Virus record (IMG/VR): IMGVR_UViG_3300025141_000016
Location: 233,105 to 297,104 of that record
DNA length: 64,000 nucleotides
Strand: one strand, 5' to 3'
This document shows, in pieces, positions 6,537-60,577 of this stretch. The position numbers were made by a program, and so were the translations under genes. Position 1 is the stretch's first letter. Every line of letters starts with the position of its first letter. The notes below the pieces were generated by a model. That model had not been told where the DNA came from, searched no databases, and worked only from the letters and a program-made list of their open reading frames with translations.

Positions 6537-6564
6537 TACCCGGAGGGGTCGCCTTTCAGACCCC
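6537..6564 (-). promoter_or_regulatory. Class II (early/middle-type) motif
   Basis: GGGGT-N18-GGGTA, before ATG 6527. Confidence 0.6.
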
Positions 6565-6600
6565 TGTGGCCGCTCGCGCAATCATCACGGACACCGCTGT

Positions 6601-8631
6601 TTAGGGGGTGCTGGCGTGGGCATCGAAGTCAATCTCGCAGGAACCCCCCATGCAAGCAAGGGTCTGTGCGCCCTGGCCCATGTCCTCTGTCTCGTAGCGG
6701 GAGAGGAGTCCGTAATCGACGGTGGGAAAGTCCTCACTCAACCGTAGGTATTCTTCCTCGGTGATCTTCGTGTAGGGGGCGAGTTCGTAGTTGCCCCCAT
6801 CGTAGGGGAGAAACGAGAGGCCGGTCACTTCATCGAAGTGCGTGTAGAGCCAGTTCCCTACCTCGTCCCACTCATGGTCACGAACGTAGACGGTGGCACT
6901 CTGGTTGTGGCCGCGCCGAGAGCACCACGTCTGCATGATGTGAAGGTAGCGTCCAAGCTGTTCCAAAGCAGTCTCATCGTCGCGGGTCATGCACCCCTTG
7001 GGGGCCTTCACGGGGAACTCGACCACCCATGTAGGACATTCATCATCAGGTCCGTCCTTGTATTTCACGTCCTTGTGGACAGGAGCACCCGAGTCGCGAA
7101 TGAGGTGGAAGAGAGGATCGGTGGCACTGACCCGCACGCGACGGATGTAGAACGGTGACCACCGTGTGTGGAACCCGCTCGCACAATCCACAGCCTGTGA
7201 ACTGTTGCCACTCGGCTTCCCACAGGCCACCGAAGCGGGCATCGGAATGTTGAGGTGAGCCGAGGCTGCGGCAGCAGTTTCCAGGGCCACGCGGTTGAAG
7301 TAGGTCATGGCCTTGGGGTCATTGGACAGGGTGGGGTTGTCACAGTGCCCGGTAATGTCCACTCCCAGGAGCCGGTCCTCATCACAGTGCTTCTTCCAAG
7401 CCGGACGGAGGTACGGGAAGTGGGTGAAGGACGCTTGAATCGCGCCGATCCAAGTAGCCACCTTGACCTTTTCAGCGAAGGAATGAACAGTGTCGTCGGC
7501 TCGCATGACAGCAGCCGAGAGATTGCAGAACTGGCCTCCACCCCCTTCGCCGGTCCAGGGGTCTTCCGCTACCGCGTAGCGGAGTAGGATCTCCCCACAC
7601 GGGTTGGAGCGCATGTCTCCACGGCGTTCTCGACGCTTGGCGCTCGGGATCATGTAAAACCCACGCTCACCGCTGCCGCTGTTCCGTAGGGCGGCCCACT
7701 CTGCATCGAAGGTCTGACGGTCAGGCTTATCGCTCCAGAATGCAGACAGGTTCGCCATGTATCGGTGCTCGGGAAACTTGCCTCGGCTCCAGTCTTTCGC
7801 GTGGCGCATCTCCTCGTCGTCAGGGTCAGAGAAGCAGATGAGAGCAGCACGACGCACACCCCCTGCCTTGACGATCTCTCCGATCATGCAGCAAATGTCG
7901 CTGACCTCCAACGAGGTCAGGTGTCGGCCCGAGGCCCCGTCGATGACCTCCTGGCAGAACTCCAAGAGAAGACGTAGAGGTTTTGGCCCGGAAGCCCTGC
8001 CCCCTTTCGTCATGCACCGTGAACCTTCAAGTCGGATCAGGGAGTAGTCGAACTCGACCGTATAGCCCTTCCACATGGAGGTGAGTCCGTGGAACACCGC
8101 GTCGGCCCAACCCTCCGTTGAGTCTGGGATCAGGTACGAGACTGTCTTCCCGTTACGGGGGGCAACCAACGGTAGATTGCTGACGAACTTCCGTTCGACG
8201 GAGTAGCCAACGCCAGTGCCCATCATCAAGATGTAGAGCATCTCCGCGAAGGCCCGCAGGTTGTCCATCGGCAGGAAGGAGCAGTTGTAGATCATCGTGT
8301 TGTCGCGCTCTGCCGCAGGACCAGCCGACCACAATGCCCGCATCGACGGCAGCGTCCCCATCTCCAGCATCCCCTCACGCACTGACTTCAACACCGCTGA
8401 TGGAATGTCCCGATTCCGGTCGATGAAATCCACATATCGGTCCACCGCTTCGGGGTAGACCTCACGCCGAGAGTCCTCTTCCCGCCATCGCAGGTAGGAG
8501 CGTGTGATCACGAACTGGGAGAGGGGGTTGGCGAAGGAGAAGGTAGGTTTGAGGTCCGCATGGAAAACCGTCCCCGGAAGCGTCTGTAGGCCATCTGTAT
8601 TGTGTGCGGCGGGGGGGCGTGGTTGGTCCAT
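6601..8631 (-). CDS. nrdJ: Class II (adenosylcobalamin-dependent) ribonucleotide reductase
   Basis: PSMR..YNC, GGVRRAA, NPCGEI, FCNL, KPSG motifs; C-terminal CxxxxC pair. Confidence 0.92.
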   Translation of the reverse strand: MDQPRPPAAHNTDGLQTLPGTVFHADLKPTFSFANPLSQFVITRSYLRWREEDSRREVYPEAVDRYVDFIDRNRDIPSAVLKSVREGMLEMGTLPSMRALWSAGPAAERDNTMIYNCSFLPMDNLRAFAEMLYILMMGTGVGYSVERKFVSNLPLVAPRNGKTVSYLIPDSTEGWADAVFHGLTSMWKGYTVEFDYSLIRLEGSRCMTKGGRASGPKPLRLLLEFCQEVIDGASGRHLTSLEVSDICCMIGEIVKAGGVRRAALICFSDPDDEEMRHAKDWSRGKFPEHRYMANLSAFWSDKPDRQTFDAEWAALRNSGSGERGFYMIPSAKRRERRGDMRSNPCGEILLRYAVAEDPWTGEGGGGQFCNLSAAVMRADDTVHSFAEKVKVATWIGAIQASFTHFPYLRPAWKKHCDEDRLLGVDITGHCDNPTLSNDPKAMTYFNRVALETAAAASAHLNIPMPASVACGKPSGNSSQAVDCASGFHTRWSPFYIRRVRVSATDPLFHLIRDSGAPVHKDVKYKDGPDDECPTWVVEFPVKAPKGCMTRDDETALEQLGRYLHIMQTWCSRRGHNQSATVYVRDHEWDEVGNWLYTHFDEVTGLSFLPYDGGNYELAPYTKITEEEYLRLSEDFPTVDYGLLSRYETEDMGQGAQTLACMGGSCEIDFDAHASTP

Positions 8632-8688
8632 GTGGTTCCTCTCGGCAGAGCGTGGAGATGATAGGGATTCAGTGCATAAGGGTAAGGG

Positions 8689-9690
8689 CTATCGACCCGT
8701 TACCGAACGGCAACCTTGAAGGAGAGAGGCTACACAAGCCACCCATGGGGCAGGGATGCCTTTGAGTAGCCCTCGGTCGGTGAAGGCAAGATTTCTTACG
8801 AGTTGCTGGAGGGATTTTACCCCCCATTTTCTCGCAGCGGGGATGTGGTCACGACGAACGGCCCATTCGGGCACACCAATGCCGGAGGCGATCCTTTGCC
8901 CATCCCAACCTCGGGCCAGGAGCAGGGACACGCGGAGCCATTGATAAGCCAGATCAGCGGGGCCACCCCGAGCCCGCAATAGGAGCATCGTGGGGTCAGT
9001 GACACTCTTTGCTCGGATCTTGGCGAGGGCTTTCGCAACCCTTACCTCGTCTGCGTTGGCCAATGCTTCCCGTAAGGGTTGCATGTCGGCATCGGGGGAT
9101 CCCCGAACGGTAGCGCGTACATGCTCCACTGTGATGGTGGGTGTTCCCTCTGACCTTGCCAGTGCAGATGCCTTGGCCACTTCAAACGCCAACGTCCCGA
9201 GATCGGTGCCCACCGCTTCGACCCAGCGTTCCCCGAGACGTGGATCGATAGCGTTCTTCTGGCCCATCAGACGTGCCGATTCGGCCACCATAAAACGACC
9301 TGCCAACTTACGTTGGTCCTTACGTTGGGTGGGCCATTTGAAGATGGTCTGGTAAGCCCCGTGGATGGGGGCTGTGGCGGGAAGTTTCTTCTCATCCACG
9401 GCCCCCCTTGCGGTGAGGAGCAAGCATGTCTGGGAAGGCTTCCCCTCGACTTGGACTTTGACCGTCTCGGGGTTCGCGTTCTTGGCCTCGGCTACGACAA
9501 AGGTGGGGAGTCCAAAGGTTGCCCCCATGGAGAGCGCAGCACAGATTTCATCGTCGTCAGCGGCATGAACCACCTCAAACCCGGCGACATGCGCTCCGAG
9601 TATCGCCTCGCGAACCCAGCGCCGTCGCACAAAAGCATTGTCCCCTCCCACAACCATGGCTGCGGGAGGCTTGGCCCAAGACAGCTTCAC
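8689..9690 (-). CDS. holA: DNA polymerase III delta (HolA)-like clamp-loader subunit
   Basis: VVGGDNAF N-terminus, VGTDLGTLAFEVAK, ITVEHV, DRGLLKG; adjacent to a delta-prime-like gene. Confidence 0.65.
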   Translation of the reverse strand: MKLSWAKPPAAMVVGGDNAFVRRRWVREAILGAHVAGFEVVHAADDDEICAALSMGATFGLPTFVVAEAKNANPETVKVQVEGKPSQTCLLLTARGAVDEKKLPATAPIHGAYQTIFKWPTQRKDQRKLAGRFMVAESARLMGQKNAIDPRLGERWVEAVGTDLGTLAFEVAKASALARSEGTPTITVEHVRATVRGSPDADMQPLREALANADEVRVAKALAKIRAKSVTDPTMLLLRARGGPADLAYQWLRVSLLLARGWDGQRIASGIGVPEWAVRRDHIPAARKWGVKSLQQLVRNLAFTDRGLLKGIPAPWVACVASLLQGCRSVTGR

Positions 9691-10301
9691 GGCATGGCCT
9701 CCATCAACGCGGAGGCTGCCACCAAGTGTGATCCCTTGCCGTCGAGGAGAGGGCGGATTGCAACCCAGGCACGCACCATCGCAGCATCTTCCGTGCCTCG
9801 TCTGGCCATGACCTCACTGAACCCCACCAAGAGGCCACCCCACTCTTTCTTGCGGTCATGCAGGATTTCCAGACAAGTAGCTGCGTCCCCTGCTTGGAAC
9901 GCATCGAACAATCGCTCGGCGTGCTCATCGAGGAAGGGTGAAGCCCACTTTGCGTCTGGGGGGCACCATCGAGGGAGGGTGCGGGATTGGATGGTGCCCG
10001 TGACCCCGCCCAGGTAGTCAGCCCAGAGAATGACCCCCAGAGGTCCGTCTGCCAGATCCTCCAGGGTCTTCAAGAGAGCGTCGGAAGCCTCGGGGGTGGC
10101 ACGGTCGATGGGACCAAGCACTACTACGGGAGGTCGGTCCCCAACCCCAGAGTTCCCAGCCAGTTCCACAACCCGTCGGGAGTCATCCACTTTGAGCCCA
10201 TCGTCTCCGATGGGGTCGAGGATCATCCGTCCTGTCTCCCGTGCATGGGAGATGGCGAGCCCTCTGGCGAGGGGTCCATGAAACAAGATCGGAGTGCTCA
10301 T
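9687..10301 (-). CDS. holB: Degenerate DNA polymerase III delta-prime (HolB)-like subunit
   Basis: ILFHGP, LKVDDSR, EASDALLKTLED, TIQSR motifs; Walker A lysine absent. Confidence 0.7.
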   Translation of the reverse strand: MSTPILFHGPLARGLAISHARETGRMILDPIGDDGLKVDDSRRVVELAGNSGVGDRPPVVVLGPIDRATPEASDALLKTLEDLADGPLGVILWADYLGGVTGTIQSRTLPRWCPPDAKWASPFLDEHAERLFDAFQAGDAATCLEILHDRKKEWGGLLVGFSEVMARRGTEDAAMVRAWVAIRPLLDGKGSHLVAASALMEAMP

Positions 10302-10483
10302 CAGAACACAATCTGGAAGAGGCGCTTACACGTCAAGCACCGATAGCGGAGGGTCATCGGATTGATGCCCTTGGGGGGCTTGAAGACTTGGATGAGTTCT
10401 GATTGTCGGCCTTCACACGCTGCAACCGCTCGACAAGCGATCCATTCCACCTTGCCTACTACTGGTCCTTTGCGCTGTGCCAT
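10301..10483 (-). CDS. Small zinc-ribbon protein
   Basis: CxxxxxC..CLTC; RBS and class II motif upstream. Confidence 0.6.
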   Translation of the reverse strand: MAQRKGPVVGKVEWIACRAVAACEGRQSELIQVFKPPKGINPMTLRYRCLTCKRLFQIVF

Positions 10484-10505
10484 TTGCCATCCTCGTGAGC
10501 ACTAC

Positions 10506-10532
10506 TACCCAGATGCGGTGCGGGCCAACCCC
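10506..10532 (-). promoter_or_regulatory. Class II motif
   Basis: GGGGT-N17-GGGTA, heading the Zn-ribbon/holB/holA operon. Confidence 0.7.
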
Positions 10533-14125: not shown

Positions 14126-15280
14126 TGCAGCGACGGCGTAGGACTCGCCGGGAGCCTCGTCCAGAAGCCCCTGCTCACAGAGGTATGCGATTGCGCGGCG
14201 GGTGTCGGCAGCGTCGAGCCGGAGGTCTGACTGGATTTCCTCGCGGGTTGACCATGGCTCATCGGCCACGAGCCGCAGGATGCGTTCGGCGTTTCCAACG
14301 GTGACTGGACCGTCACGAAGAGACTTGCGAACTCGTCCGGCAAGGTGGGCTGCTCGGAGGGTGGAGACACCTTCGCTGGCAGCGATCTCATCGCGGGTAG
14401 CCCCAGCGATCAAAGCGTCGTAGACCCGCTGATAACGCTCGGCGGCTCCTCGGTGGGCAGCACGGACGAGAGCACGACCGCCTGTGGTCTGGATTGTGTC
14501 TTCGTCGGTGAGGATGAGCATATCTTCCGGGCTCGGGCTCCGAGAGATGATCACCTCATGGAGATCATCCTCGTCTCCCTCGTAGGCGACTTCCCACTCG
14601 GTCCCCTGGTTGGCCCGCTGGCAAACGTACTCGGGGGATTCTGTCTCGACGCGAACTCGGATCTCGTGCTGGGTCCGTGCCCCACGCATCCGAGCGAGGG
14701 GTTCTGCGCCTCGGACGAAGACGCTGGAGAAGTGCTTGCGCTTCAGAAACTTGTAGAGCGTGGAGAGCGATACGGTGCCTTTCTCGGCCAGTGCCTTGTC
14801 GAAGGTGCCACCTGCGGCCCATTTGGCGATCCAGAGCCCCGTCAACGAGAGACATTCGGCGTAGTCTTCGGAGGGGTAGTCGCGGGAGAGCAGCGCGGCG
14901 AGTCGGCGGTCCAGGGCGCGGTCGCGCAGTTGGGCTTCCAGCCATTCTGATGAGGTCAGCGGTGCGGCTTCATCGACCAGGGAGGAGAGGTGGGTCGTCA
15001 CCGTCTCGTGGTCGTCTGACCGGAGGTGGGAGAGCAGCCCAGCCGCGTCACCCTGGAGAGCAGACCAGAGGTCAGCGCAGAGGAGGGCTTGTGAGCCGGT
15101 GCCCCGGTAGCCGTTCTGGTTCACGGAGTCGCGTCGAACGATACTCCGTTTGCGGGCCGTGGCTTTGGCGAGGTCGGTGATCCCGGCTGCGACCAGCGAT
15201 TCAACTTCGCTGGGAGTCTGGGGGGAAGCACCGTGGATGAGATCGAGCAGGGAGAGCAGGTATGAGAGTCGTCGGGTCAT
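14114..15280 (-). CDS. Sigma-like / HTH transcription factor with C-terminal winged helix
   Basis: SPEDML..GATRDEIAASEGVS..RVRKSLR (region 4-like), then RILRLV..TREEI..LCEQGLL (wHTH). Confidence 0.55.
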   Translation of the reverse strand: MTRRLSYLLSLLDLIHGASPQTPSEVESLVAAGITDLAKATARKRSIVRRDSVNQNGYRGTGSQALLCADLWSALQGDAAGLLSHLRSDDHETVTTHLSSLVDEAAPLTSSEWLEAQLRDRALDRRLAALLSRDYPSEDYAECLSLTGLWIAKWAAGGTFDKALAEKGTVSLSTLYKFLKRKHFSSVFVRGAEPLARMRGARTQHEIRVRVETESPEYVCQRANQGTEWEVAYEGDEDDLHEVIISRSPSPEDMLILTDEDTIQTTGGRALVRAAHRGAAERYQRVYDALIAGATRDEIAASEGVSTLRAAHLAGRVRKSLRDGPVTVGNAERILRLVADEPWSTREEIQSDLRLDAADTRRAIAYLCEQGLLDEAPGESYAVAASLR

Positions 15281-15521
15281 GGGATTCCTTGGAGTTCCGA
15301 TGCCAGCAAGCTGGACAGGATGGGTGAGTGGTTTTTGGTCGAGGACGGGGACGGTGCTCTTACCGAGCGGGTCAAGGTCTGCGACTTCTCAACATCCTAT
15401 CCGCCGTGACCCTATGGGTCAACCCCACCTTGGCCATCAAGTGGATCGAAGTGGGCCAGATGCGGCCCCGTGCCCCATGCTTATTTTTTGGCGGGGGGAT
15501 CACCCCTGATCAGGGTGGTGT

Positions 15522-15536
15522 CGGTAGGTCGTCTAT
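15522..15536 (+). promoter_or_regulatory. Class I motif
   Basis: CGGTAG-gtcgt-CTAT, before 15581. Confidence 0.75.
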
Positions 15537-15580
15537 CTGGGTAGTGGGGGTAGAAGAGAAGTCCCTTTGGAGAGATCCCC

Positions 15581-17017
15581 ATGAATCGCTACGCTGCCGC
15601 TTTGGTTCGTTTGGCGGTATCCCTGCCGTCAGGGAGCCGTGACCGCCGAGTGATCCTTGCTTTGATCAAAGAGGCGGGAGCCCGTGAGGATTTTCTGGCT
15701 CGCTACGAGTTCCTTGGGGGGCTCACCGGCAAGTCGGGTGATCGGGTCAAGAGTGATCTGAAGCAGGGCGACTACGAGCCGTATGTGAAGGCACTTGCCG
15801 CTAATGGCTGGGACGAGGGCACCGCACAGCGCCCCGGAGAGGCCCTTACGTTCGTTGACCCCACGGCCAACATGGGGCTGTGGACGGCTTTGGTGAGGGG
15901 CGGAAACTCGGCCTTGGGCCGTGCCGTGGACGAGGTGGCCAAGTGGCAACCTGCCCTGTCAGGAATCTCTGGTGAGGATGTTGCCCAGGTACTCTCACAC
16001 GGGGGTCAACACTGGCCTGGGATGCGCTTCGACTCTCGCGTGAAGAATGAGAAAGGTGGCTTTGGTGATTATGTCGAGCGCGTGAGCGGCGAGGAGCCCT
16101 ACGCGACTGGAGACAACATCTTCCGGTCTGTCGGGAAGGAACTGAAGTCCAAGAAGTTCAACCTCGCTTTCATTATCAAGAGGTTGATGGGGATTGCCCG
16201 CAACAAGACGAAGGATTGGGTCCGCTCGGTGGATGCCGGGAAGTGGGAGGGACCATTCCCCGAAACCGAGGAAGGCCAGCAGATTGTCCCGAGGGGATAC
16301 ACACCCCCGGACCCTGCTGACATGCTCACCAAGGAGTTGTATCTGAAAGCCATCGATCCCGTGATGAAGCGGGTGTTGGCTGATGCCCCTGCACAGGCTC
16401 GGATTTGGGAGGCTCTGTTGGCTTCCGTCCAGGCCAACAAGAACTTTCTTGGGGTATCCGCGAGAGGAAAGGGGGAGGGTGATGTGACCCTGGAGGGCAC
16501 GAAGTTCCGTCCCTTCATGGAGAAGTATTTTGAGGGGCAGACGGATGAAGACGACAACCCCATCCGAATCCCCACCACCCAGAAGATCGCCGCAAACTTC
16601 CAGAAACTCCTGAAGAAGATGAGGGCTGCGTTGGCGGGTCTTTCCGACGCAGAGTTGGCCAAGGGGCTCCCGAGACAAGACCGTGAGATCCTGAAAGACC
16701 GTGACATAGCGAGTGTCTACTGGTCGGAGGTCCATCGTCGCCGTCGGGCTTTGCTCATTCGTATGGCTTCCACGTTCCCCGTGGGGTCAGAACACCGCAA
16801 GGTGTTGCTCCGGCAGGCATCGGATGTGGGGGCGAAGGACGTGTTGACCGAGAAATCGCTCATCAAGTATTTGAAGGCGACGGGGGATACTGTCTCGGCT
16901 TCAACGCTGGCCTACGGCTTTGGGGGCAACCCCCAGCAACACACGAAGTTCCTTCAGCGGCTTGTGGCCAAGGGTGTGCTTGATAAGGACGGCAAAGAGT
17001 ACAGCCTCGCCCTCTGA
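15581..17017 (+). CDS. Tag-A polyprotein: ECF-sigma-like domain + winged-helix domain
   Basis: Two tag-A copies; GEDVAQ and LMGIARNKTKDWVR resemble ECF region 2; C-terminal wHTH LQRLVAKGVL..YSL. Confidence 0.5.
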   Translation: MNRYAAALVRLAVSLPSGSRDRRVILALIKEAGAREDFLARYEFLGGLTGKSGDRVKSDLKQGDYEPYVKALAANGWDEGTAQRPGEALTFVDPTANMGLWTALVRGGNSALGRAVDEVAKWQPALSGISGEDVAQVLSHGGQHWPGMRFDSRVKNEKGGFGDYVERVSGEEPYATGDNIFRSVGKELKSKKFNLAFIIKRLMGIARNKTKDWVRSVDAGKWEGPFPETEEGQQIVPRGYTPPDPADMLTKELYLKAIDPVMKRVLADAPAQARIWEALLASVQANKNFLGVSARGKGEGDVTLEGTKFRPFMEKYFEGQTDEDDNPIRIPTTQKIAANFQKLLKKMRAALAGLSDAELAKGLPRQDREILKDRDIASVYWSEVHRRRRALLIRMASTFPVGSEHRKVLLRQASDVGAKDVLTEKSLIKYLKATGDTVSASTLAYGFGGNPQQHTKFLQRLVAKGVLDKDGKEYSLAL

Positions 17018-17057
17018 CCTTCCCGTGGGTAGGGTGGGGGAGCCAGGAGCCCTGTGT

Positions 17058-17438
17058 ATGCCCACCTACGAATACCGCTGCGATGCCTGTGAGGAGCACT
17101 TTGAAAAGCTGCTCCCGATAGCACGCTACCGAGAACCCCAAGATTGTCCGGCGTGTGGGCACACCCCCGCTACGAAGTTGGTTTCGGGAGGATCAGGATT
17201 TATCCTGCGGGGTGATGGATGGGCTGGGAAGAACAACCGGGTCCGGGGTCAGATGAGAGCGAAGAATCGTCGTCTGGATGCGGCCCAAGCTGAACGAGGC
17301 CAAGACGCGGGGGGCAAGCTGGCCCCGAATGTTGAGGGCGAGAGGGTGGGGTCATGGAGCGAGGCAACCAAACTGGCGAGGTCCAAGGGCAAGGACACCT
17401 CTGGCTACGAGGCGCGGGCGCGGAAGGAAAAGAAGTGA
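17058..17438 (+). CDS. FmdB-family zinc-ribbon protein
   Basis: MPTYEYRCDAC..CPACG..FILRGDGW. Confidence 0.85.
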   Translation: MPTYEYRCDACEEHFEKLLPIARYREPQDCPACGHTPATKLVSGGSGFILRGDGWAGKNNRVRGQMRAKNRRLDAAQAERGQDAGGKLAPNVEGERVGSWSEATKLARSKGKDTSGYEARARKEKK

Positions 17439-17650
17439 AACGCCTGCCTCCTCCCGATGAGGAGCAGCCGCTCTCCGCGCAGTTCGCAGGCAACTTTCAG
17501 AGGGCGTTCACGTTTACCTTCGTGCTGACCGTTACGACGCTCGCTGTGCTCGGGGTCGTTTTCGTCCGGGCGGCACGGCGATTGCGTCTCCAGAAAGAGC
17601 GAGGGAAGAACATCATCGACGTAGAGGTAGTGGAAGTGGACCCTCAATAG
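17435..17650 (+). CDS. Small single-pass membrane protein
   Basis: GTGA overlap with the upstream stop; hydrophobic segment followed by basic residues. Confidence 0.55.
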   Translation: MKRLPPPDEEQPLSAQFAGNFQRAFTFTFVLTVTTLAVLGVVFVRAARRLRLQKERGKNIIDVEVVEVDPQ

Positions 17651-17659
17651 GTCGCCTAT
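17645..17659 (+). promoter_or_regulatory. Class I motif, variant
   Basis: CAATAG-gtcgc-CTAT, before 17687. Confidence 0.6.
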
Positions 17660-17686
17660 CGGCAGCGCCCCGGTAGGAGAACAAGC

Positions 17687-18370
17687 ATGGTCATTCCGAA
17701 TCTGATTGGACGATCTCGCGGGCTGATTGATTTCAGCCTTCGGTCTGATCCCTTGGTCGCGGCATACCAGTTCCGTGCTGCCATGACGCTAACGGCAGCC
17801 TTCGCTGGAGGGACCACCGCGTTCACGGTTGGCAGGGGCCGCACCCTGGAGTCTCCGACTATCCAGCGGACGGGTCGAGGACGAGATGAGTCTTCCCTCC
17901 GTGGGCTGACCCGAGTGTCCATTGATCTCAATGACTACTCCAACGCCACCATCCCTGGTGATGCGGCTATGTCCTTTTGGCGTATCCGAGAGATAGACGC
18001 GGCAGGGACAGTCTTACCGGCAGGTCCGGTGCTGGTTGTTCCCCCCACACAGACCGAAGGGTTCCTTACTCTGTCGGGTGCGGCTCCCGCCGTGGCTGCC
18101 ACGGCCACCGGGCTCCCCCCACTCGGGGCAGTGGCGATTGCTTTTCCCCGTGAGGTCACCTCTCTGACGATCCACAACGATAGCGGTGCTGACCCTATGG
18201 GGATCAGCACCTCGGCAGGTGACCCCGAAATGCTGATCCCGCCGTCAGTGGCGGGACAGTCTTCTCTGACTTTCGATCCCACCTCTCTGTCCCTGCTTTA
18301 TCTGCATGGGATCGGTGGAGCAGTCCCTTTCCGCATCACGGCGTTCATGCCGGGTGGACCACCTCGATAA
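17687..18370 (+). CDS. Probable virion structural protein
   Basis: Beta/Pro-rich composition; class I motif upstream. Confidence 0.55.
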   Translation: MVIPNLIGRSRGLIDFSLRSDPLVAAYQFRAAMTLTAAFAGGTTAFTVGRGRTLESPTIQRTGRGRDESSLRGLTRVSIDLNDYSNATIPGDAAMSFWRIREIDAAGTVLPAGPVLVVPPTQTEGFLTLSGAAPAVAATATGLPPLGAVAIAFPREVTSLTIHNDSGADPMGISTSAGDPEMLIPPSVAGQSSLTFDPTSLSLLYLHGIGGAVPFRITAFMPGGPPR

Positions 18371-18379
18371 TCATTCAAT
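18365..18379 (+). promoter_or_regulatory. Class I motif, variant
   Basis: CGATAA-tcatt-CAAT, before 18434. Confidence 0.5.
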
Positions 18380-18433
18380 ACCCACATCTTATGTGCAGGG
18401 TCCACCCCGCTCATCACTCTCGGAGAAACGAAC

Positions 18434-19460: not shown

Positions 19461-19487
19461 GGGGTTCGCGCCCCCTCCGAGCGGGTA
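19461..19487 (+). promoter_or_regulatory. Class II motif
   Basis: GGGGT-N17-GGGTA, before 19497 and recD2. Confidence 0.7.
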
Positions 19488-22230: not shown

Positions 22231-22257
22231 GGGGTTCCCTCTGTTCCTGGGTGGGTA
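22231..22257 (+). promoter_or_regulatory. Class II motif
   Basis: GGGGT-N17-GGGTA, before 22277. Confidence 0.7.
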
Positions 22258-23586: not shown

Positions 23587-23612
23587 GGGGTGTTTCCTAT
23601 CCCCGTCGGGTA
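23587..23612 (+). promoter_or_regulatory. Class II motif
   Basis: GGGGT-N16-GGGTA, before ssb. Confidence 0.65.
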
Positions 23613-24412: not shown

Positions 24413-25075
24413 GTGTTGGTGCTTGGCCTTGATCCGTCGCTGACGAACTACGGCTGGGCACTTCACGATACAAACGCCCCCGTCGGTGATGCCTCTCGGT
24501 GTCCCGCTCGGGGGCGTTTTCGTACATCTGCGAAGGAGGAGTTCGTCACCCGCTACATGGCCCAGCGGGAGTCCTTGCGGGCCGTGATCCGCGAGCACCG
24601 TCCAGACAGGGTGGGGATTGAGTTCCCCATCTTCGACCAAATGTGGTCCGAGGGCATGTACGGCCTGTTCCTCTATTCTTGCGAGGCTTTGAGGGCCGAG
24701 TGTATGGACGTGGTGTTCTGGTCGCCCCTCCAAGCGAAAGCACATGCTCGCGACACCCTCGACCGCCCGAAGGGGTGGAAGATGGACAAAGTGGACATGT
24801 GCGAAGCCGCGAAGCAGGACGTAGGTGGGGGACGCAACTGGAATCACAACGAAGCCGATGCGTACCTTGTGGGGGTGCTGGCCGGTCGCTTCTGGGACTT
24901 CTTTGATGGGAGGCTGGGGGAGGGGGGTCTGACCCCTACCGAGAGTCGGTACTTCACCAAGGTCCACACATTCAAGCGTGGGCGGAAGGCTGGTCGGACG
25001 GTCAAGAAAGGCGTGATCCACCGGGAACAAGACAGATTTTTCAGATGGTCCCGACTACGGGAGGAGGGTGAATAA
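24413..25075 (+). CDS. ruvC: RuvC-like Holliday junction resolvase
   Basis: VLGLDPSLTNYGWA, GIE, K..DK, HNEADA. Confidence 0.85.
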   Translation: MLVLGLDPSLTNYGWALHDTNAPVGDASRCPARGRFRTSAKEEFVTRYMAQRESLRAVIREHRPDRVGIEFPIFDQMWSEGMYGLFLYSCEALRAECMDVVFWSPLQAKAHARDTLDRPKGWKMDKVDMCEAAKQDVGGGRNWNHNEADAYLVGVLAGRFWDFFDGRLGEGGLTPTESRYFTKVHTFKRGRKAGRTVKKGVIHREQDRFFRWSRLREEGE

Positions 25076-26292: not shown

Positions 26293-26319
26293 GGGGTGGA
26301 GTTCTCTCCCTTTCCGGTA
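26293..26319 (+). promoter_or_regulatory. Class II motif
   Basis: GGGGT-N17-CGGTA, before the SbcC N-half. Confidence 0.65.
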
Positions 26320-29766: not shown

Positions 29767-29793
29767 GGGGTCAGCGACCCCTCTGGTCGGGTA
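29767..29793 (+). promoter_or_regulatory. Class II motif
   Basis: GGGGT-N17-GGGTA, before 29816 and dnaN. Confidence 0.7.
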
Positions 29794-35061: not shown

Positions 35062-35088
35062 GGGGTCTGACCCCAGCCCGAATGGGTA
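35062..35088 (+). promoter_or_regulatory. Class II motif
   Basis: GGGGT-N17-GGGTA, before the primase. Confidence 0.7.
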
Positions 35089-35823: not shown

Positions 35824-35850
35824 GGGGTGCTCCCCACCCCCCGATGGGTA
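35824..35850 (+). promoter_or_regulatory. Class II motif
   Basis: GGGGT-N17-GGGTA, heading the dnaX-nusG-sigma operon. Confidence 0.7.
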
Positions 35851-36724: not shown

Positions 36725-38126
36725 TACCAAGTATCGGCCCCGGACCTATGGGGATGTGCTGGGCCAGGATGCCACCGTGGCTGTCCTTCGCCAGTTCGTG
36801 AAGGAGGGAAGGGGGCTTCACCAGTCCTACGTCTTCTGTGGGCAGCACGGATCGGGGAAGACAACCCTCGGTCGTCTTCTTGCTCGGTCGTTGCTGTGTG
36901 AGGCTCCGGTTGAGGGGGCCTCTTGCGACTCCTGTGGGTCGTGCCGGGTGCTTCTCGATGGGGGCACCCACGAGTGTTTTGAGGAACTGGATGCGGCTAC
37001 GAAGTCGGGGAAGGCAGACCTCGCCCGAATCGTTGAAGACGTGACCTACTCCACCTATTCGGGAAAGCGCAGGATCTACCTTTTCGATGAGTCCCATCGC
37101 CTGTCCAAACAGGCCCTCGACGTGCTCTTGAAGCCGATGGAGGACAACGTGTTGGGGTCAGAGGAAAAGCGGCTCGTGTGCATCTTCTGTACCACCGAGC
37201 CAGCCAAGATGGCGAGCACCATCTTCTCGCGCTGTGCCCCGGCCTTCGTGATCCGCCCCGCACCTCTCCCCGAGATTGTGGAACGGTTGACCCATGTTTG
37301 TGGGCAGGAAGGGATTGAGTACGAAGGGGATGCTCTCACTCTCCTCGTGGAGCAGAGTGAGAGCCATATCCGAGATGCCTTGAAGATGGTCGAGGGGGTT
37401 TCGATGCTCGGGGGCATCACCCGGACTAATGCAGCAGCTTACTTGCATCTGGAGGCGAACGAGGAGGTTCTGGGGCTTCTGGAGGCCCTTGGGTCGGACC
37501 TCAACCGTGTGGTGAGCGTTGCCACCTCACTCTCCGAGAGGATGAGCCCGTCGGGGGCCTATGAGCGAGTAGCGGAAGCAGCGATGCTTGTCTACCGGGT
37601 TTACTTGGGGGTTGCCTCAATCCCTACCAAGTGGGATGGTGGTCGGGTGAAGGCCCTGGCAGAGTCGGGGCCGTCTCTTCTCACCGTCGCTTCCCGTTTT
37701 GCTGCCCCACCCCACCGTCCTACGCGGCAGACCTTGATCCTTGACTCGGTTGCCTCCCATCACCTCTACGGGTCCGATGTGGGGGTTTCTGTCGGAGCCC
37801 AGATCGTTGTATCTGCCCCCGCGCCCCCCGTTGCTGCTCCCCCCACCCCCCCACTTGTTTCGGGGGCTTGCTCGGCACTTTCGGAAGGCTCGTCTCCTGA
37901 CCTTGATCCTGTGGGTAATGTCGGTCATGGATCAGACACGCCAACAGCATCAACAACCGCCAACGGGATATGGGTGGACTCCCGAGCGGTGGGTCATGGC
38001 CCTGTTTCGCGGACTGACAAGTCCCAACCCACATCCGATAAAGAATCTCTCTCGTCACCTGTTTTTCGTGAACTGGTACGTCACCATCTCCGAAGGATGA
38101 TGGGTGACCATGGACGTTCGGGATGA
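36714..38126 (+). CDS. dnaX: DNA polymerase III gamma/tau clamp-loader ATPase
   Basis: KYRP..DVLGQ, GQHGSGKTT, C-x-CxxCxxC, ELDAA, FDESH, CTTE, SRC, RDAL. Confidence 0.93.
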   Translation: MALDTKYRPRTYGDVLGQDATVAVLRQFVKEGRGLHQSYVFCGQHGSGKTTLGRLLARSLLCEAPVEGASCDSCGSCRVLLDGGTHECFEELDAATKSGKADLARIVEDVTYSTYSGKRRIYLFDESHRLSKQALDVLLKPMEDNVLGSEEKRLVCIFCTTEPAKMASTIFSRCAPAFVIRPAPLPEIVERLTHVCGQEGIEYEGDALTLLVEQSESHIRDALKMVEGVSMLGGITRTNAAAYLHLEANEEVLGLLEALGSDLNRVVSVATSLSERMSPSGAYERVAEAAMLVYRVYLGVASIPTKWDGGRVKALAESGPSLLTVASRFAAPPHRPTRQTLILDSVASHHLYGSDVGVSVGAQIVVSAPAPPVAAPPTPPLVSGACSALSEGSSPDLDPVGNVGHGSDTPTASTTANGIWVDSRAVGHGPVSRTDKSQPTSDKESLSSPVFRELVRHHLRRMMGDHGRSG

Positions 38127-38652
38127 AATCACATGGGCAGTTTTGGAACTCTCTCCACACGGAGAGCGAGTAGCCGAGGCGGGTCTGTTGGAGGAGATCC
38201 TTCGTGACTACTCCGACATGCCGGAGGGGCATCCGGTTTTCGTCCCTTATCTCACCCTCACTTACAGTGGAACGCAGTCACTCTTCTCGGTAATGGAGGG
38301 GTACGCCTTCGTGGGTTCTGGGCTTCCAGATCACTCCTACCGAGGTTTACTCAACACCCCTTATGTGCGGGGACTCCTATCGAGGGGAGGGAATGGGCAG
38401 TCGTGGGTTTTGGACACGGTGCCGGACGCATCTGTGCGCGAACTGCGCCAACGGTTGAATGAACTCGTAGCCGTTGAGATACAAGTGGATATGAAAGTTA
38501 CGGTCATTGAGGGCTCTTACTCGGGCCTGGAGGGTAAGGTAGTCAGCGTTGGGCCAAAACATGCGATGGTTTTGGTCGAGCTTCGCTCCCTACGGGCGCT
38601 GAAAAAGATGCCGCGCTTCATCCTTCGCCCCTGGGAAGAACCTAATGAGTAA
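38110..38652 (+). CDS. NusG/RfaH-like transcription elongation factor
   Basis: NGN-like (VFVP..MEGYAFV) plus KOW (VTVIEGSYSGLEGKV). Confidence 0.75.
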   Translation: MDVRDEITWAVLELSPHGERVAEAGLLEEILRDYSDMPEGHPVFVPYLTLTYSGTQSLFSVMEGYAFVGSGLPDHSYRGLLNTPYVRGLLSRGGNGQSWVLDTVPDASVRELRQRLNELVAVEIQVDMKVTVIEGSYSGLEGKVVSVGPKHAMVLVELRSLRALKKMPRFILRPWEEPNE

Positions 38653-39253
38653 CTATTGGTGCAGTCATATCGTTCTGGATCCCTCCGACATGGAGAGGAT
38701 TTTTTCAACCGAGGACACCCTCTCCAACTACCCCAGCATCTCCGAGGAGATGTCGGATGAAAGCAAGGAGGAGTTAGACCAAGTGAAGGGGGTTCTGGAG
38801 CAGATCCCCCCGCGTGAGGCTGACTTCGTGGAGTTGTACTTCTTTCAGAAACTCCGGCAGACCACCATTGCGGAGATGTTCAACATCAGCCAGCCGACGG
38901 TGTGCTACCGACTTCAACGAGCCGCAGCCAGGATCCGCTATCTCATCGACATGCCGACTTACAACGTCTGGCTGATGGAGCAGGATCTCCGAGGGGTGCT
39001 CACTGATCCCCGAGACATTGAGATCATGTTGGGGATGGTTGAGACAACCTGTCAGTCGGAAGTGGCGAAGCGGATGGGGGTGACACAGGGTTTTGTGCGG
39101 CACCGCTTCTTCCGCACTATCGACCGCCTGAAGAAGATGAGCGGCATGGATACCTATGTGCAGGTGTACGAACATGTGGCCGGGAACCTCAACATCCTCA
39201 AAGAGACACAGCGATCTCAATGGTCCGAGCCGGTGATCTACGTCGTGAACTGA
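38645..39253 (+). CDS. Sigma-70 region 4-like double-HTH protein
   Basis: IPPREADFVELYF..QTTIAEMFNISQPTV..RLQRA; second HTH QSEVAKRMGVTQGFV. Confidence 0.7.
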   Translation: MSNYWCSHIVLDPSDMERIFSTEDTLSNYPSISEEMSDESKEELDQVKGVLEQIPPREADFVELYFFQKLRQTTIAEMFNISQPTVCYRLQRAAARIRYLIDMPTYNVWLMEQDLRGVLTDPRDIEIMLGMVETTCQSEVAKRMGVTQGFVRHRFFRTIDRLKKMSGMDTYVQVYEHVAGNLNILKETQRSQWSEPVIYVVN

Positions 39254-46121: not shown

Positions 46122-46148
46122 TACCGGAAGGTCTTGAAATCGTACCCC
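46122..46148 (-). promoter_or_regulatory. Class II motif
   Basis: GGGGT-N17-CGGTA, before 46086. Confidence 0.65.
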
Positions 46149-56911: not shown

Positions 56912-56936
56912 CTTGAAGACCCCCGTAGGGTTAGGT

Positions 56937-56951
56937 CGGTAGGGAGGCTAT
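56937..56951 (+). promoter_or_regulatory. Class I motif
   Basis: CGGTAG-ggagg-CTAT, before 56977. Confidence 0.75.
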
Positions 56952-56976
56952 GATCTCACAGGGATAGAGGTGTTGT

Positions 56977-57558: not shown

Positions 57559-57566
57559 GGGGGACC

Positions 57567-58256: not shown

Positions 58257-58264
58257 GGTGAACG

Positions 58265-59671: not shown

Positions 59672-60033
59672 TGGCTGCAACCCCCTATGCCTACAACGCC
59701 TATGTCGTATCGGTTTACGATGGTGACACCATCACCGTCATTCTCGATATGGGAATGGGGGTGCAGAAGAAAGCCAAATGTCGAATGTACGGCATCGACA
59801 CCCCGGAAATCCGTGGCAAGACGGTTCGAGAAAAGACCGCAGCCAAAGTCGCCAGGGATCGCTTGCGAGAGCTCGTCAACGAGAAGACGGTACTCATCCA
59901 GTCCCTTACCAAGCCCGACAAGTACGGAAGGCTGCTGGTAAAAGTGTGGATCGATGACACCTACATCAACGACCTTCTAATCGAAGAAGGGTTGGCGAGA
60001 GCCTACGATGGTGGAAAGAAGAGTCCTTGGTAG
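59671..60033 (+). CDS. Thermonuclease (SNase-like)
   Basis: VYDGDTI, RMYGIDTPE, DKYGRLL, EGLA; TAATG-coupled start. Confidence 0.9.
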   Translation: MAATPYAYNAYVVSVYDGDTITVILDMGMGVQKKAKCRMYGIDTPEIRGKTVREKTAAKVARDRLRELVNEKTVLIQSLTKPDKYGRLLVKVWIDDTYINDLLIEEGLARAYDGGKKSPW

Positions 60034-60326
60034 ACCCTAATGGATACCTGGAACTCGAATCCAAAAGCGCGGATGTGCAACCAGTGCAACCCACAATCCT
60101 TCGGGAATAGTCGCGCCGCGACCAAGTGCGATTAAGACGGACAAGTAAGTAAACGCCTCATCTTCATCGAGCCTGAGGTTCCGTTTTTCCATCCATGTTT
60201 GAGCGGTAGAATCCATGAGAAGGCAAGCCCCTCCCATAAATCTAACACAAAACCCCCCTGTTTGCGAAACAGTTTCCTGTTCGCACAAACTAAGGGGCAA
60301 AGTTTCCCCCAAAAGGGGCAAAAGTT

Positions 60327-60509
60327 TTAGCTGTTTCGGGCTTCCAAAACACCTTTCCGTACACCGTCCATCGACTTCTTGATGGTCATGGCGACTTTAC
60401 GGATACGTGTGCCGGGAGCTCCGGCCATACCCTTGTCCACCTTTTCGGCATCGGCCTTCAATGCTTGAAGGGCTTCGATGGCAGCCTCGATTTGTTCTGA
60501 AACATTCAT
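60327..60509 (-). CDS. Histone H1/Hc1-like small nucleoid protein
   Basis: DAEK..KG..A.GTRIRK pattern; GGAGGAG RBS; class II motif upstream. Confidence 0.6.
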   Translation of the reverse strand: MNVSEQIEAAIEALQALKADAEKVDKGMAGAPGTRIRKVAMTIKKSMDGVRKGVLEARNS

Positions 60510-60550
60510 GTCTATTCTCCTCCCCAATGGGGTTTGGTTATGGTTGATAA

Positions 60551-60577
60551 TACCGAACGATGAAGCATAGGAACCCC
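60551..60577 (-). promoter_or_regulatory. Class II motif
   Basis: GGGGT-N17-CGGTA, before 60509. Confidence 0.65.

What the first reader, a model, noticed from the sequence alone, without database searches (positions are those of the whole stretch)
6537..60577. Second promoter class GGGGT-N17-(G/C)GGTA ahead of replication and accessory genes
Eleven sites on both strands, always oriented with the downstream gene; the spacer is 17 nt in nine, 16 and 18 in one each. They head the recD2, ssb-ruvC-recA, sbcC/D, dnaN, primase, dnaX and holB/holA units and none heads a tagged or structural gene. The geometry is sigma-70-like, and the GGGTA -10 box resembles SigB/SigF-type promoters. Both classes share a GGTA core. 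Together they imply a two-stage, phage-encoded transcription programme.
Basis: partly seen in the sequence, partly recalled or inferred. Interest (0 to 1): 0.7.

Follow-up and report, generated by a model that had tools for sequence, protein, structure and literature searches.

The report
Replication-gene promoters of a huge phage
A two-box DNA signal (a run of G ending in T, about 17 bases, then GGTA) sits in front of the replication and recombination genes of an uncultured marine huge phage. It is almost certainly a phage-specific promoter class, probably read by the host RNA polymerase carrying the phage's own sigma factor. This is a clear new example of a known strategy, not a new kind of system.

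Summary
GGGGT-N16-18-SGGTA occurs 13 times in the window (0.8 expected). In the whole 297-kb virus record it occurs 36 times, and 26 of those lie in the 7% of bases that are intergenic. All 26 point at the next gene.

- **Spacer:** peaks sharply at 17 nt (23 copies), then 18 nt (10); every other spacer length from 8 to 29 gives 0-9.
- **Fuller consensus:** aGGGGGGT-N16-Y(G/C)GGTA.
- **Conservation:** both boxes stay fixed while the spacer drifts at orthologous positions in related phages.
- **Leaderless primase:** in five phages the primase ATG lies exactly 9 nt after the GGTA-type -10 box (GAGTA in one), with no Shine-Dalgarno sequence.
- **Genes headed:** RecD2, RuvC-like/RecA, SbcCD, sliding clamp, primase and clamp-loader units, plus PolA, the DnaB unit and the phage sigma gene outside the window.

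The record encodes one ECF/sigma-H-like sigma (306 aa, outside the window), a NusG-like factor and a tandem sigma-region-4 protein (both in the window). No RNA polymerase was detected.

The "two-stage" reading is too simple. A third class of 24 copies lies outside the window, and all three classes share a GTA core. The SigB/SigF likeness is limited to the -10 box. No RNA data could be found, so transcription starts and the identity of the reading factor remain inferred.

The parts
2394..2421 (+). Class B site (spacer 18). Its GGTA is also the first box of a class A motif at 2418-2431. It lies 39 nt before gene 2461-3474 (HAD_SAK_1 / tRNA-ligase CPD-like, RNA repair).
6537..6564 (-). Class B site (spacer 18). 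GGGTA is followed by 9 nt and then the ATG of gene 6135-6527 (130 aa, unknown function).
10506..10532 (-). Class B site (spacer 17). It heads the minus-strand unit: a 60-aa ORF at 10301-10483, a clamp-loader delta'-like fragment at 9687-10226, gene 8689-9690, and probably the gene 6601-8631, which has only weak, sub-threshold ribonucleotide-reductase domain hits.
19461..19487 (+). Class B site (spacer 17). The ATG of gene 19497-19976 lies 9 nt after GGGTA. RecD2 (20012-22228) follows.
22231..22257 (+). Gene 22693-23577 follows.
23587..23612 (+). Class B site (spacer 16, or 17 counted from the preceding G). It heads gene 23690-24409 and the RuvC-like resolvase 24413-25075.
24924..24951 (+). Class B site (spacer 18) inside the 3' end of the RuvC-like gene, 125 nt before recA (25077-26291). 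It has a high matrix score, and a near-identical site is present in relative G001.
26293..26319 (+). Class B site (spacer 17), 19 nt before the SbcC-like ATPase 26339-27574. SbcD-like 27857-28822 and the PD-(D/E)XK nuclease 28819-29763 follow.
29767..29793 (+). Class B site (spacer 17), 22 nt before gene 29816-30088. The sliding clamp 30088-31242 follows.
35062..35088 (+). Class B site (spacer 17). The first possible start codon of the Toprim primase (35098-35820) lies exactly 9 nt after GGGTA, with no Shine-Dalgarno sequence. This 9-nt distance is kept in four related phages while the 9 bases themselves differ.
35824..35850 (+). Class B site (spacer 17). It heads the metallopeptidase 35888-36358, gene 36383-36724, the DnaX-like clamp loader 36714-38126, the NusG-like gene and the tandem sigma-4 gene. 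Its position is conserved in four relatives.
46122..46148 (-). Class B site (spacer 17), 35 nt before the minus-strand gene 45841-46086 (DUF7417, 81 aa).
60551..60577 (-). Class B site (spacer 17), 41 nt before the minus-strand gene 60327-60509 (Hc1 histone-like, 60 aa).
38104..38652 (+). NusG-like transcription factor (NGN + KOW, 182 aa), transcribed within the unit headed by site 35824.
38645..39253 (+). Tandem sigma-region-4 protein (202 aa). Residues 38-102 form a sigma region-4 helix-turn-helix; a second helical HTH-like domain spans 108-179. There is no region 2. The family has more than 1,100 members, almost all viral.

Best explanation
The sites are promoters of a 'middle' or replication class of an uncultured marine huge phage. 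The record is 297 kb and estimated two-thirds complete.

**Proposed mechanism.** The host's core RNA polymerase is directed to these sites by the phage's own single sigma factor. This is a 306-aa protein with an ECF/sigma-H-like two-domain body and a 110-aa N-terminal extension, encoded at record positions 107568-108488, outside the window. Its strongly conserved region-2 domain would read the (G/C)GGTA box as a -10 element. A region-4-type helix-turn-helix would read the G-run box (aGGGGGGT) about 17 nt upstream as a -35 element. Transcription would start about 9-10 nt after the A of GGTA. This makes the primase mRNA leaderless; two other genes show the same 9-nt distance.

**What the class drives.** It drives the replication and recombination genes. 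It also drives the genes for the sigma itself, the NusG-like factor and the tandem region-4 protein, so it also feeds the later programme.

**Shown:** the motif statistics, orientation, conservation, gene content, and the fold and family of the sigma.

**Inferred:** that the motif is a promoter (about 0.9), that the phage sigma reads it (about 0.6), the start-site position, and the temporal order.
For: **Statistics.**
- 13 sites against 0.8 expected in the window.
- 26 of 36 in the 7% intergenic fraction, 26/26 co-oriented, and a spacer peak at 17-18 nt only.
- 34 matrix hits against 0.7 in shuffles.

**Footprints.** In four related phages (tandem sigma-4 protein 72-81% identical) the sites before the primase and metallopeptidase units keep the G run and a GTA-core -10 box while the spacer diverges. 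The -10 box is GGGTA or CGGTA in most; in L018 the primase site has GAGTA and a shorter G run. The primase ATG stays exactly 9 nt after this box, and it is the first start codon of its frame.

**No alternative promoters.** Sigma-70-consensus matches are depleted: 1 against 4.2 in the replication region and 33 against about 105 in the record.

**A phage sigma exists.**
- A profile of the 306-aa family hits PDB sigma-H 3mzy across both domains, E 3.9e-5.
- All 50 best Foldseek PDB matches to the AlphaFold model (pLDDT 83) are sigma factors or sigma-containing transcription complexes.
- JGI names homologues as sigma-24 family.

**Link between sigma and motif.**
- The sigma gene has a class B site 40 nt upstream, kept in relatives down to 56% identity. 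Promoters for a phage's own sigma also sit upstream of that sigma's gene in phage 7-11 (PMC4331800).
- Each of five related genomes has exactly one orthologue. None has a detectable RNAP beta or beta' subunit, including two complete genomes of 436 and 536 kb.
- Region 2 of the sigma is 61-88% identical across these genomes, against 18-42% for region 4.
- A GTA(G) core is the constant feature of every abundant upstream motif in all of them. This covers the sGGTA, CGGTAG and CGTATAG boxes here, AGTAG in G004 and CGTAG in G005. In G004, G-run...GGTAG/GTAG sites persist before three units of the syntenic replication region, one of them placed upstream of RecD2 like site 19461; the other two gene correspondences are assumed from synteny and were not tested.
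- G004 also has about 22 intergenic sigma-70-like sites, so its host probably uses ordinary promoters and the GTAG-type motifs are phage-specific.
Against: - There is no transcript evidence: no RNA run was listed, so no start site is shown.
- The sigma gene has only a class B site in front of it, which leaves a bootstrap problem. The first sigma molecules would need injection, weak host recognition, or a promoter in the missing third of the genome.
- The host is unknown, so a host sigma with this specificity cannot be excluded.
- The G run is kept in G004 although the sigma's region 4 is only 21% identical there. This fits the much better conserved tandem region-4 protein (about 50% identical) as its reader at least as well as the sigma's own region 4.
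- The three classes share the GTA core, so what separates them in time is not explained.
- RNAP absence rests on Pfam models that miss very divergent phage polymerases, and a third of this genome is missing.
Confidence: 0.6

Rival explanations
1. The sites are promoters read by a host sigma factor. This could be an alternative SigB/SigF-like factor or an unusual housekeeping sigma. On this reading they are the phage's early, host-dependent promoters, and the phage sigma made from them then drives another class, for example class A.
For: - The -10 box GGGTA matches the SigB/SigF-type -10 box (PMC8346170; GGTAA for cyanobacterial SigF, PMC2532724).
- The sigma, NusG-like and tandem sigma-4 genes are all inside class B units. 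That is what one expects if class B fires before the phage factors exist.
- The host is unidentified.
Against: - The box lacks the TAnnnT pattern of housekeeping -10 elements; there is no T enrichment 4 nt after TA.
- The -35 box and the 17-nt spacer do not fit SigB/F promoters, which have GTTT and 12-14 nt (PMC8346170).
- The same GTA-core architecture recurs in distant relatives (sigma 36-38% identical) from other samples, one of which also carries ordinary sigma-70-like sites.
- Depending on a stress or alternative host sigma for essential replication genes would be unusual.
Confidence: 0.17
2. This is sigma appropriation. The G run is read by the tandem sigma-region-4 protein (window 38645-39253), which docks on the polymerase flap in place of a sigma's own region 4. 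This would resemble T4 MotA/AsiA or gp33. The -10 box is then read by whichever sigma is bound.
For: - The protein has a bona fide region-4 fold plus a second HTH-like domain and no region 2.
- It is far better conserved (72-92% among relatives, about 50% to G004/G005) than the sigma's region 4 (18-42%). This matches the deep conservation of the G run before replication genes.
- G runs occur in both class B and class C.
Against: - There is no direct evidence of DNA or polymerase binding; the complex prediction was not run by the tool.
- Its gene is itself inside a class B unit.
- This idea overlaps with the best explanation rather than excluding it.
Confidence: 0.1
3. The sites are promoters for a phage-encoded RNA polymerase that was not detected. 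It could be too divergent for the models used, or encoded in the missing third of the genome.
For: - The record is only about 67% complete.
- PhiKZ/AR9-type polymerases escape Pfam models and use short specific promoters (PMC5449584).
- Many large proteins here have no annotation.
Against: - No beta or beta' match appears in two complete relatives either.
- Iyer and colleagues (PMC7824862) describe jumbo phages that lack an RNA polymerase but encode sigma factors, and suggest they recruit the host enzyme.
- A NusG-like factor and region-4 domains make sense only with a bacterial-type multisubunit polymerase.
- The two-box 17-nt geometry is typical of sigma factors.
Confidence: 0.06
4. The sites are not promoters. 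They could be an oriented intergenic signal of another kind: an RNA processing or stability element, a terminator-like hairpin, or a binding site for a replication or partition protein.
For: - About a third of the sites carry a GGGG...CCCC hairpin that begins in the G run.
- One site lies inside a gene.
- No transcripts were seen.
Against: - The hairpin is not conserved in orthologous sites.
- The signal is two short boxes with a fixed gap and a free spacer sequence, which is how sigma factors read DNA and not how RNA elements or dyad operators look.
- Its distance to the start codon varies from 9 to 279 nt by the automatic gene calls (77 nt at most once the 60-aa ORF at 10301-10483 and the primase ATG at 35098 are used), so it is not a translation signal.
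- There is no T run after the hairpins.
Confidence: 0.05

Closest known systems
Promoters of group 4 (ECF) and sigma-H-like sigma factors, e.g. B. subtilis sigma-W TGAAAC-N16-CGTA (consensus from my own knowledge, not retrieved here)
   Same: - Two short boxes 16-18 nt apart.
- A -10 box built on a GT(A/C) core.
- A two-domain sigma (regions 2 and 4 only).
- The sigma gene preceded by its own promoter type.
   Different: - The -35 box is a G run ending in T, not the usual AAC-containing box.
- The sigma carries a 110-aa N-terminal domain and a conserved NxGKCPFD...SSFGHYVH insert-like stretch in region 2.
- Standard ECF models (TIGR02937, PF04542) do not reach their thresholds on it.
SigB/SigF-type promoters: B. 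subtilis and Streptomyces SigB GTTTAA-N12-14-GGG(A/T)A(A/T), PMC8346170; Synechocystis SigF TAGGC...GGTAA, PMC2532724
   Same: The -10 box GGGTA / GGTAA.
   Different: - The -35 box is GGGGGGT, not GTTT or TAGGC.
- The spacer is 17 nt, not 12-14.
- The phage sigma lacks the region 3 of group 3 sigmas.
Phage-encoded sigma cascades on host RNA polymerase: SPO1 (PMC13401047), phiEco32 / 7-11 (PMC4331800), T4 gp55/gp33 and AsiA as summarised in PMC7824862
   Same: - Phage-specific promoter classes partition replication genes from structural genes.
- Host core polymerase is re-targeted by a phage sigma.
- Promoters for the phage sigma also sit upstream of its own gene in 7-11.
   Different: - A different consensus, and an unrelated sigma lineage found only in uncultured huge phages.
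- At least three classes share one -10 core.
- The phage also carries a tandem region-4 protein and a NusG paralogue.
- No host-type early promoters are visible in the part of the genome available.
Jumbo phages that lack an RNA polymerase but encode sigma factors ('group 2' of Iyer et al. 2021, PMC7824862)
   Same: No RNAP genes detected. Sigma and minimal HTH factors are predicted to recruit the host enzyme.
   Different: - That group is defined by family B DNA polymerase and a T4 gp23-type capsid. This phage has a family A polymerase and a DnaN/DnaX-type clamp system.
- Membership of that group was not tested.

Membership tests
Sigma-70-family two-box promoter | Two conserved boxes with a constrained 16-18 nt spacer | tested here: met
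   23 copies at N17 and 10 at N18, against 0-9 at all other spacers from 8 to 29; logo.
Sigma-70-family two-box promoter | Located upstream of genes and oriented with them, including at strand switches | tested here: met
   26/26 intergenic sites are co-oriented, 8 of them on the minus strand; 26 of 36 matches fall in the 7.2% of bases that are intergenic.
Sigma-70-family two-box promoter | Transcription starts 6-10 nt downstream of the -10 box | not testable with these tools
   No RNA run was listed. The only evidence is indirect: the primase ATG is fixed 9 nt after the GGTA-type -10 box in five phages, with no Shine-Dalgarno sequence.
Housekeeping (group 1) sigma promoter | -10 box of the form TAnnnT and -35 box like TTGACA | tested here: not met
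   No T enrichment 4 nt after the TA of GGTA. Consensus matches are depleted in the region and in the record.
SigB/SigF-type promoter | -10 box GGG(T/A)A(T/A) | tested here: met
   (G/C)GGTA is invariant by construction, with G at the first position in 16 of 26 sites; consensus from PMC8346170.
SigB/SigF-type promoter | -35 box GTTT(AA) and a spacer of 12-14 nt | tested here: not met
   The -35 box is aGGGGGGT and the spacer is 17 nt, against PMC8346170.
SigB/SigF-type promoter | A cognate group 3 sigma (regions 2, 3 and 4) available | tested here: not met
   The only complete phage sigma has regions 2 and 4 only. Host sigmas are unknown.
ECF / sigma-H-type promoter and sigma | A two-domain sigma (regions 2 and 4) encoded by the element | tested here: met
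   The family profile matches PDB 3mzy sigma-H over both domains, E 3.9e-5. The 50 best structural matches are all sigma factors or sigma-containing complexes, led by ECF sigma and sigma-H entries.
ECF / sigma-H-type promoter and sigma | The sigma gene preceded by its own promoter type | tested here: met
   A class B site lies 40 nt before the sigma gene, conserved in relatives L031-L034 and L042.
ECF / sigma-H-type promoter and sigma | -35 box containing AAC and -10 box containing CGT | tested here: not met
   The -35 box is a G run. The -10 box has GGTA, so it shares only the GT(A) part. The ECF consensus is taken from my own knowledge.
ECF / sigma-H-type promoter and sigma | Match to curated ECF sigma models at their thresholds | tested here: not met
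   PF04542 reaches only E 0.037. Pfam finds nothing on the protein. TIGR02937 hits only the tandem region-4 gene.

The most novel reading that the evidence does not exclude
A clade of uncultured huge phages (about 300-540 kb, no RNA polymerase of their own) may run a three-tier transcription programme from one modular promoter code. A constant GTA(G) -10 core would be read by the conserved region 2 of a single phage sigma. It would be combined with interchangeable second elements: a G run, a lineage-specific TTCAAC or CTTAyyT box, or a downstream CTAT. These would be read by different region-4-type modules, namely the sigma's own fast-evolving region 4 and a separate, highly conserved tandem region-4 adaptor protein. 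A phage NusG paralogue would act on elongation. This would be a split-sigma or adaptor mechanism for temporal class switching, not so far described for phages.
Probability: 0.2. Interest if true: 0.75.

Novelty: new member of a known kind. Interest (0 to 1): 0.5.

Why it matters
Huge phages from metagenomes have no cultured hosts, so almost nothing is known about how they time gene expression. This work yields a clean, testable promoter code for one such clade. It has three motif classes with a shared core, conserved across genomes of 300-540 kb. It comes with the likely trans-acting parts: one divergent sigma, a tandem region-4 protein and a NusG paralogue.

The code lets genes of unknown function be sorted into temporal classes from sequence alone. 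It supplies orthogonal sigma-promoter candidates for synthetic biology. It also turns the question "how do RNAP-less huge phages take over host transcription" into simple in vitro experiments. As a category it is a familiar strategy: phage sigma plus phage-specific promoters.

Tried and rejected
- **RNA evidence.** DNA runs are marine metagenomes. No RNA run was listed for the putative capsid gene, so read laying was not used and no start sites were mapped.
- **Sigma-DNA complex.** A job was submitted (sigma residues 112-306 plus site 22231), but the tool did not fold it. It gives no evidence either way.
- **Host identification failed.**
  - No near match in GenBank phages.
  - The sigma family in genome assemblies appears only on two probably mis-binned MAG contigs.
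  - The only GenBank relative is an uncultured 485-kb phage, LR745208.1.
  - The record carries no tRNA genes.
- **Weak region-4 hits.** Hits at record 81026-81622 and 179005-179538, both behind class C elements, were examined and rejected as sigma factors; neither has any PDB or Pfam sigma similarity.
- **Split-sigma idea.** I tested whether the gene upstream of the tandem region-4 gene supplies the missing region 2. It does not; it is NusG-like.
- **Covariation idea.** I first thought the abundant CTTA-N16-nGTAG promoters of G004 and G005 were the counterparts of class B, and that a change in the sigma's recognition helix tracked loss of the G run. I withdrew this. Those promoters are not next to the replication genes, and G-run...GTAG sites persist there in G004. 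They match class C in geometry instead.
- **Hairpin in the G run.** It is enriched but not conserved in orthologues.

Full report
**Context**

The window is the last 64 kb of a 297,104-bp IMG/VR virus record (about 60% GC). CheckV estimates the record to be 67% complete. Near-identical DNA is held only by marine metagenome runs. There is no close match among GenBank phages. My own gene calls, from a codon-usage model trained on the long ORFs, give 294 genes covering 93% of the record.

**The observation**

GGGGT-N16-18-SGGTA occurs 13 times in the window. Dinucleotide shuffles give 0.8 on average and 5 at most. The same pattern read backwards gives 2.

That site lies inside the 3' end of the RuvC-like gene, 125 nt before recA. 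A thirteenth site at 2394 lies just outside the range.

In the whole record there are 36 matches:
- 26 fall in the 7.2% of bases that are intergenic (P about 2e-22).
- All 26 are co-oriented with the next gene, eight of them on the minus strand.
- The spacer profile is the cleanest internal control: 23 copies at N17 and 10 at N18, against 0-9 at every other spacer from 8 to 29.

The conserved part is longer than reported, aGGGGGGT-N16-Y(G/C)GGTA. A weight matrix finds 34 sites at a score where shuffled sequence gives 0.7, and adds none in the window.

**What the sites head**

| Gene product | Window coordinates |
|---|---|
| RecD2 | 20012-22228 |
| RecA | 25077-26291 |
| SbcC-like / SbcD-like | 26339-28822 |
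| PD-(D/E)XK nuclease | 28819-29763 |
| Toprim primase | 35098-35820 |
| DnaX-like clamp loader | 36714-38126 |
| RuvC-like resolvase | 24413-25075 |
| Sliding clamp | 30088-31242 |
| Clamp-loader fragment | 9687-10226 |

Outside the window the same motif precedes family A DNA polymerase, the DnaB unit and the phage sigma gene.

It is CGGTAG-N5-CTAT, with 41 copies of which 37 are intergenic, and a start codon 22-46 nt downstream in most. It heads the tail, baseplate and capsid-module side of the genome. The two classes do share (C/G)GGTA, and at 2394-2431 one GGTA serves both.

**Conservation**

Five related viral contigs carry the tandem region-4 gene (72-100% identical). In the four that are not identical, the motif recurs at orthologous positions. 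Alignments of the regions before the primase and the metallopeptidase units show a clear pattern. The G run and a GTA-core -10 box (GGGTA or CGGTA in most; GAGTA with a shorter G run before the primase in L018) stay fixed while the 17-nt spacer diverges.

In all five phages the primase ATG lies exactly 9 nt after this -10 box, although those 9 bases differ and hold no Shine-Dalgarno sequence. The ATG is the first start codon of its reading frame. The simplest reading is a transcription start at or next to the ATG, giving a leaderless mRNA. Two further sites (6537 and 19461) have the same 9-nt distance, though there the intervening bases could also serve as a ribosome-binding site.

Ordinary sigma-70-type promoters are depleted:
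- 1 against 4.2 expected in the replication region.
- 33 against about 105 in the record, with only six weak intergenic matches.

**The phage's transcription proteins**

1. **Tandem region-4 protein (window 38645-39253, 202 aa).** It matches sigma region 4 twice and nothing else. Its best PDB sequence match is SigF region 4. The AlphaFold model (pLDDT 77) shows a region-4 domain at residues 38-102 (TM 0.86 to SigF region 4, 0.78 to sigma-E region 4 on -35 DNA) and a second helical domain. There is no region 2. It belongs to a family of more than 1,100 mostly viral proteins. It is not a complete sigma.
2. **NusG-like protein (window 38104-38652).** The gene just upstream has NGN and KOW domains. 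It is not a missing sigma half.
3. **Complete sigma (record 107568-108488, minus strand, 306 aa).** Pfam misses it: region 2 scores only E 0.037. A profile of 31 homologues matches PDB sigma-H 3mzy over both domains, E 3.9e-5. All 50 best structural matches to the model (pLDDT 83) are sigma factors or sigma-containing complexes, led by sigma-H and ECF sigma entries. JGI labels several homologues as sigma-24 family. It has regions 2 and 4 only, plus a 110-aa N-terminal beta-rich domain.

No RNA polymerase beta, beta' or T7-type domain is detected in the record. For the T7-type model the control genomes were silent too, so that result carries no weight.

**Linking the sigma to the motif**

The sigma gene has a class B site 40 nt upstream. 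That site is kept in relatives down to 56% sigma identity.

Five related genomes each carry exactly one orthologue and no detectable beta or beta' subunit. This includes two complete genomes of 436 kb (G004, terminal repeats) and 536 kb (G005).

| Genome | Sigma region 2 identity | Sigma region 4 identity |
|---|---|---|
| G001 | 88% | 42% |
| G002 | 67% | 29% |
| G004 | 66% | 21% |
| G005 | 61% | 18% |

(All.)

I fetched G004, G002 and the first 400 kb of G005 and repeated the upstream-motif analysis:
- **G002** keeps the G-run and GTATAG signals.
- **G004** has a very sharp promoter, gGGkCTTAyyT...cAGAGTAGTCTAGG. CTTA-N16-AGTAG occurs 58 times; N17 occurs 4 times and the other spacings tried (10-21) at most once each. 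46 of 49 intergenic sites are co-oriented.
- **G005** has GrCTTACTT...GCGTAGAT. CTTA-N16-CGTAG occurs 67 times; the other spacings tried (10-23) at most 3 times each. 56 of 60 intergenic sites are co-oriented.

These abundant classes are not next to the replication genes. In geometry they match this phage's third class, described below.

Before three units of the syntenic replication region of G004, G-run...GGTAG/GTAG sites persist. One of them sits upstream of RecD2, like site 19461; the correspondence of the other two genes to window genes is assumed from synteny and was not tested. In G005 the GGGTA(G) box persists there too.

So a GTA(G) core is the constant of every abundant upstream motif in the clade, in step with the conserved region 2. 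The second boxes vary. G004 also has about 22 intergenic sigma-70-like sites. This suggests that its host uses ordinary promoters and that the GTAG-type motifs are phage-specific.

It remains inference.

**Who reads the G run**

This is open. The G run is conserved down to G004, where the sigma's region 4 is only 21% identical. The tandem region-4 protein is about 50% identical there. An attempt to model sigma on promoter DNA was not run by the tool and says nothing.

**A third class**

Outside the window, between 38 and 211 kb of the record, there are 24 copies of a 38-bp element: GGGGGGTTCAACTCsCCCCyCTATCTCCGTATAGgaGTG. All intergenic copies point at the next gene. Most have a T-rich tract upstream and a small gene 50-110 nt downstream. 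The element shares the G run with class B and a GTA core with both other classes. The T-to-GTA distance is 21 nt, against 19 nt in class B. So the programme has at least three classes, not two. The order C, then B, then A is plausible from gene content but is not shown.

**Comparison with known systems**

- **SigB/SigF-type promoters.** The -10 box looks like the SigB/SigF type (GTTTAA-N12-14-GGG(A/T)A(A/T), PMC8346170; GGTAA for cyanobacterial SigF, PMC2532724). The -35 box, the spacer and the domain make-up of the phage sigma do not fit.
- **ECF / sigma-H systems.** The two-domain sigma, the 16-18-nt spacer, a -10 box on a GT(A/C) core and a sigma gene behind its own promoter type fit better. 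The usual AAC -35 box is absent, and curated ECF models do not reach threshold.
- **Phage sigma cascades.** Functionally this belongs with SPO1, phiEco32/7-11 and T4 (PMC13401047, PMC4331800, PMC7824862). It also resembles the RNAP-less, sigma-bearing jumbo phages discussed by Iyer and colleagues (PMC7824862).
- **Cultured relatives.** I found none. The only GenBank hit is an uncultured 485-kb phage.

**Limits**

- There are no transcripts, so start sites and timing are inferred.
- The host is unknown.
- A third of the genome is missing.
- The sigma gene has only a class B site in front of it, so how the first sigma is made is unexplained.
- Gene calls are my own and approximate.

**Verdict**

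It is very likely (about 0.9) a promoter class for replication and recombination genes, and probably (about 0.6) dependent on the phage's own sigma acting on host polymerase. It is a new member of a known kind, of moderate interest. The interest rises if the modular three-class code and the tandem region-4 adaptor idea prove right.

Noticed in passing
record G000 38,695-211,130 (outside the window; e.g. loci L023:966-1005, L024:11449-11490): A third motif class: 24 copies of a 38-bp element, GGGGGGTTCAACTCsCCCCyCTATCTCCGTATAGgaGTG. All intergenic copies are oriented with the next (mostly small) gene and usually follow a T-rich tract. The G run and C run can pair around TTCAACT, like a tRNA T-arm. 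Many of the downstream leaders carry a second conserved hairpin, GCCCGACTGACGGGCCAA, just before the ribosome-binding site.
   Followed up: partly
window 2418, 3470, 5675, 12033, 15523, 33307, 33768, 39261, 40062, 43388, 44673, 46625, 46996, 52665, 56938 (start positions, + strand): Class A motif, CGGTAG-N5-CTAT: 41 copies in the record, 37 intergenic, with a start codon 22-46 nt downstream in most. It heads the structural-looking units and shares (C/G)GGTA with class B.
   Followed up: partly
record G000 212,650-213,220 (L029:12650-13220): A non-coding stretch of more than 500 bp with AAACGTAACAGT-type repeats about 21 nt apart and a 15-nt direct repeat (CGGTCACAGGTGTCC, twice). It is flanked by class B sites at 212372 and 213165. 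This is a possible replication origin.
   Followed up: partly
record G000 108,489-108,620 (L024:8489-8620, minus strand): Two copies of ACCACTATC flank the class B site in front of the sigma gene. They may form an operator for control of sigma expression.
   Followed up: no
window 24924-24940, 29767-29785, 35062-35076, 6545-6564 and others: About a third of class B sites have a GGGG...CCCC hairpin that starts in the G run. This is enriched about three-fold over chance but is not conserved in orthologous sites of relatives.
   Followed up: partly
relatives G004 (436 kb, complete) and G005 (536 kb, complete): Each has its own very sharp two-box promoter at a single spacing: CTTA-N16-AGTAG 58 times in G004, and CTTA-N16-CGTAG 67 times in the first 400 kb of G005. 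G004 also has about 22 intergenic sigma-70-like sites. The replication gene order (RecD2 ... RecA, SbcCD, clamp, primase, DnaX, NusG-like, tandem sigma-4) is syntenic with the window.
   Followed up: partly
window 60327-60509 (-): A 60-aa Hc1 histone-H1-like protein gene with its own class B site. This may be a phage nucleoid-associated protein.
   Followed up: no
window 2461-3474 (+) and record G000 14816-18583: Two proteins carry the HAD domain of 'Swiss Army Knife' RNA-repair proteins. One also has a weak tRNA-ligase phosphodiesterase hit. The other is fused to a eukaryotic-type topoisomerase IB core in a 1,255-aa protein.
   Followed up: no
window 60000-64000: The last 4 kb of the record has GC 0.52 against about 0.59 elsewhere, negative GC skew, and a run of minus-strand genes of unknown function.
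   Followed up: no
window 17058-17438 and 46161-46619: Two small proteins carry an N-terminal FmdB-type zinc ribbon (Zn_ribbon_8). A similar ribbon is inserted in the family A DNA polymerase (record 84891-87671).
   Followed up: no
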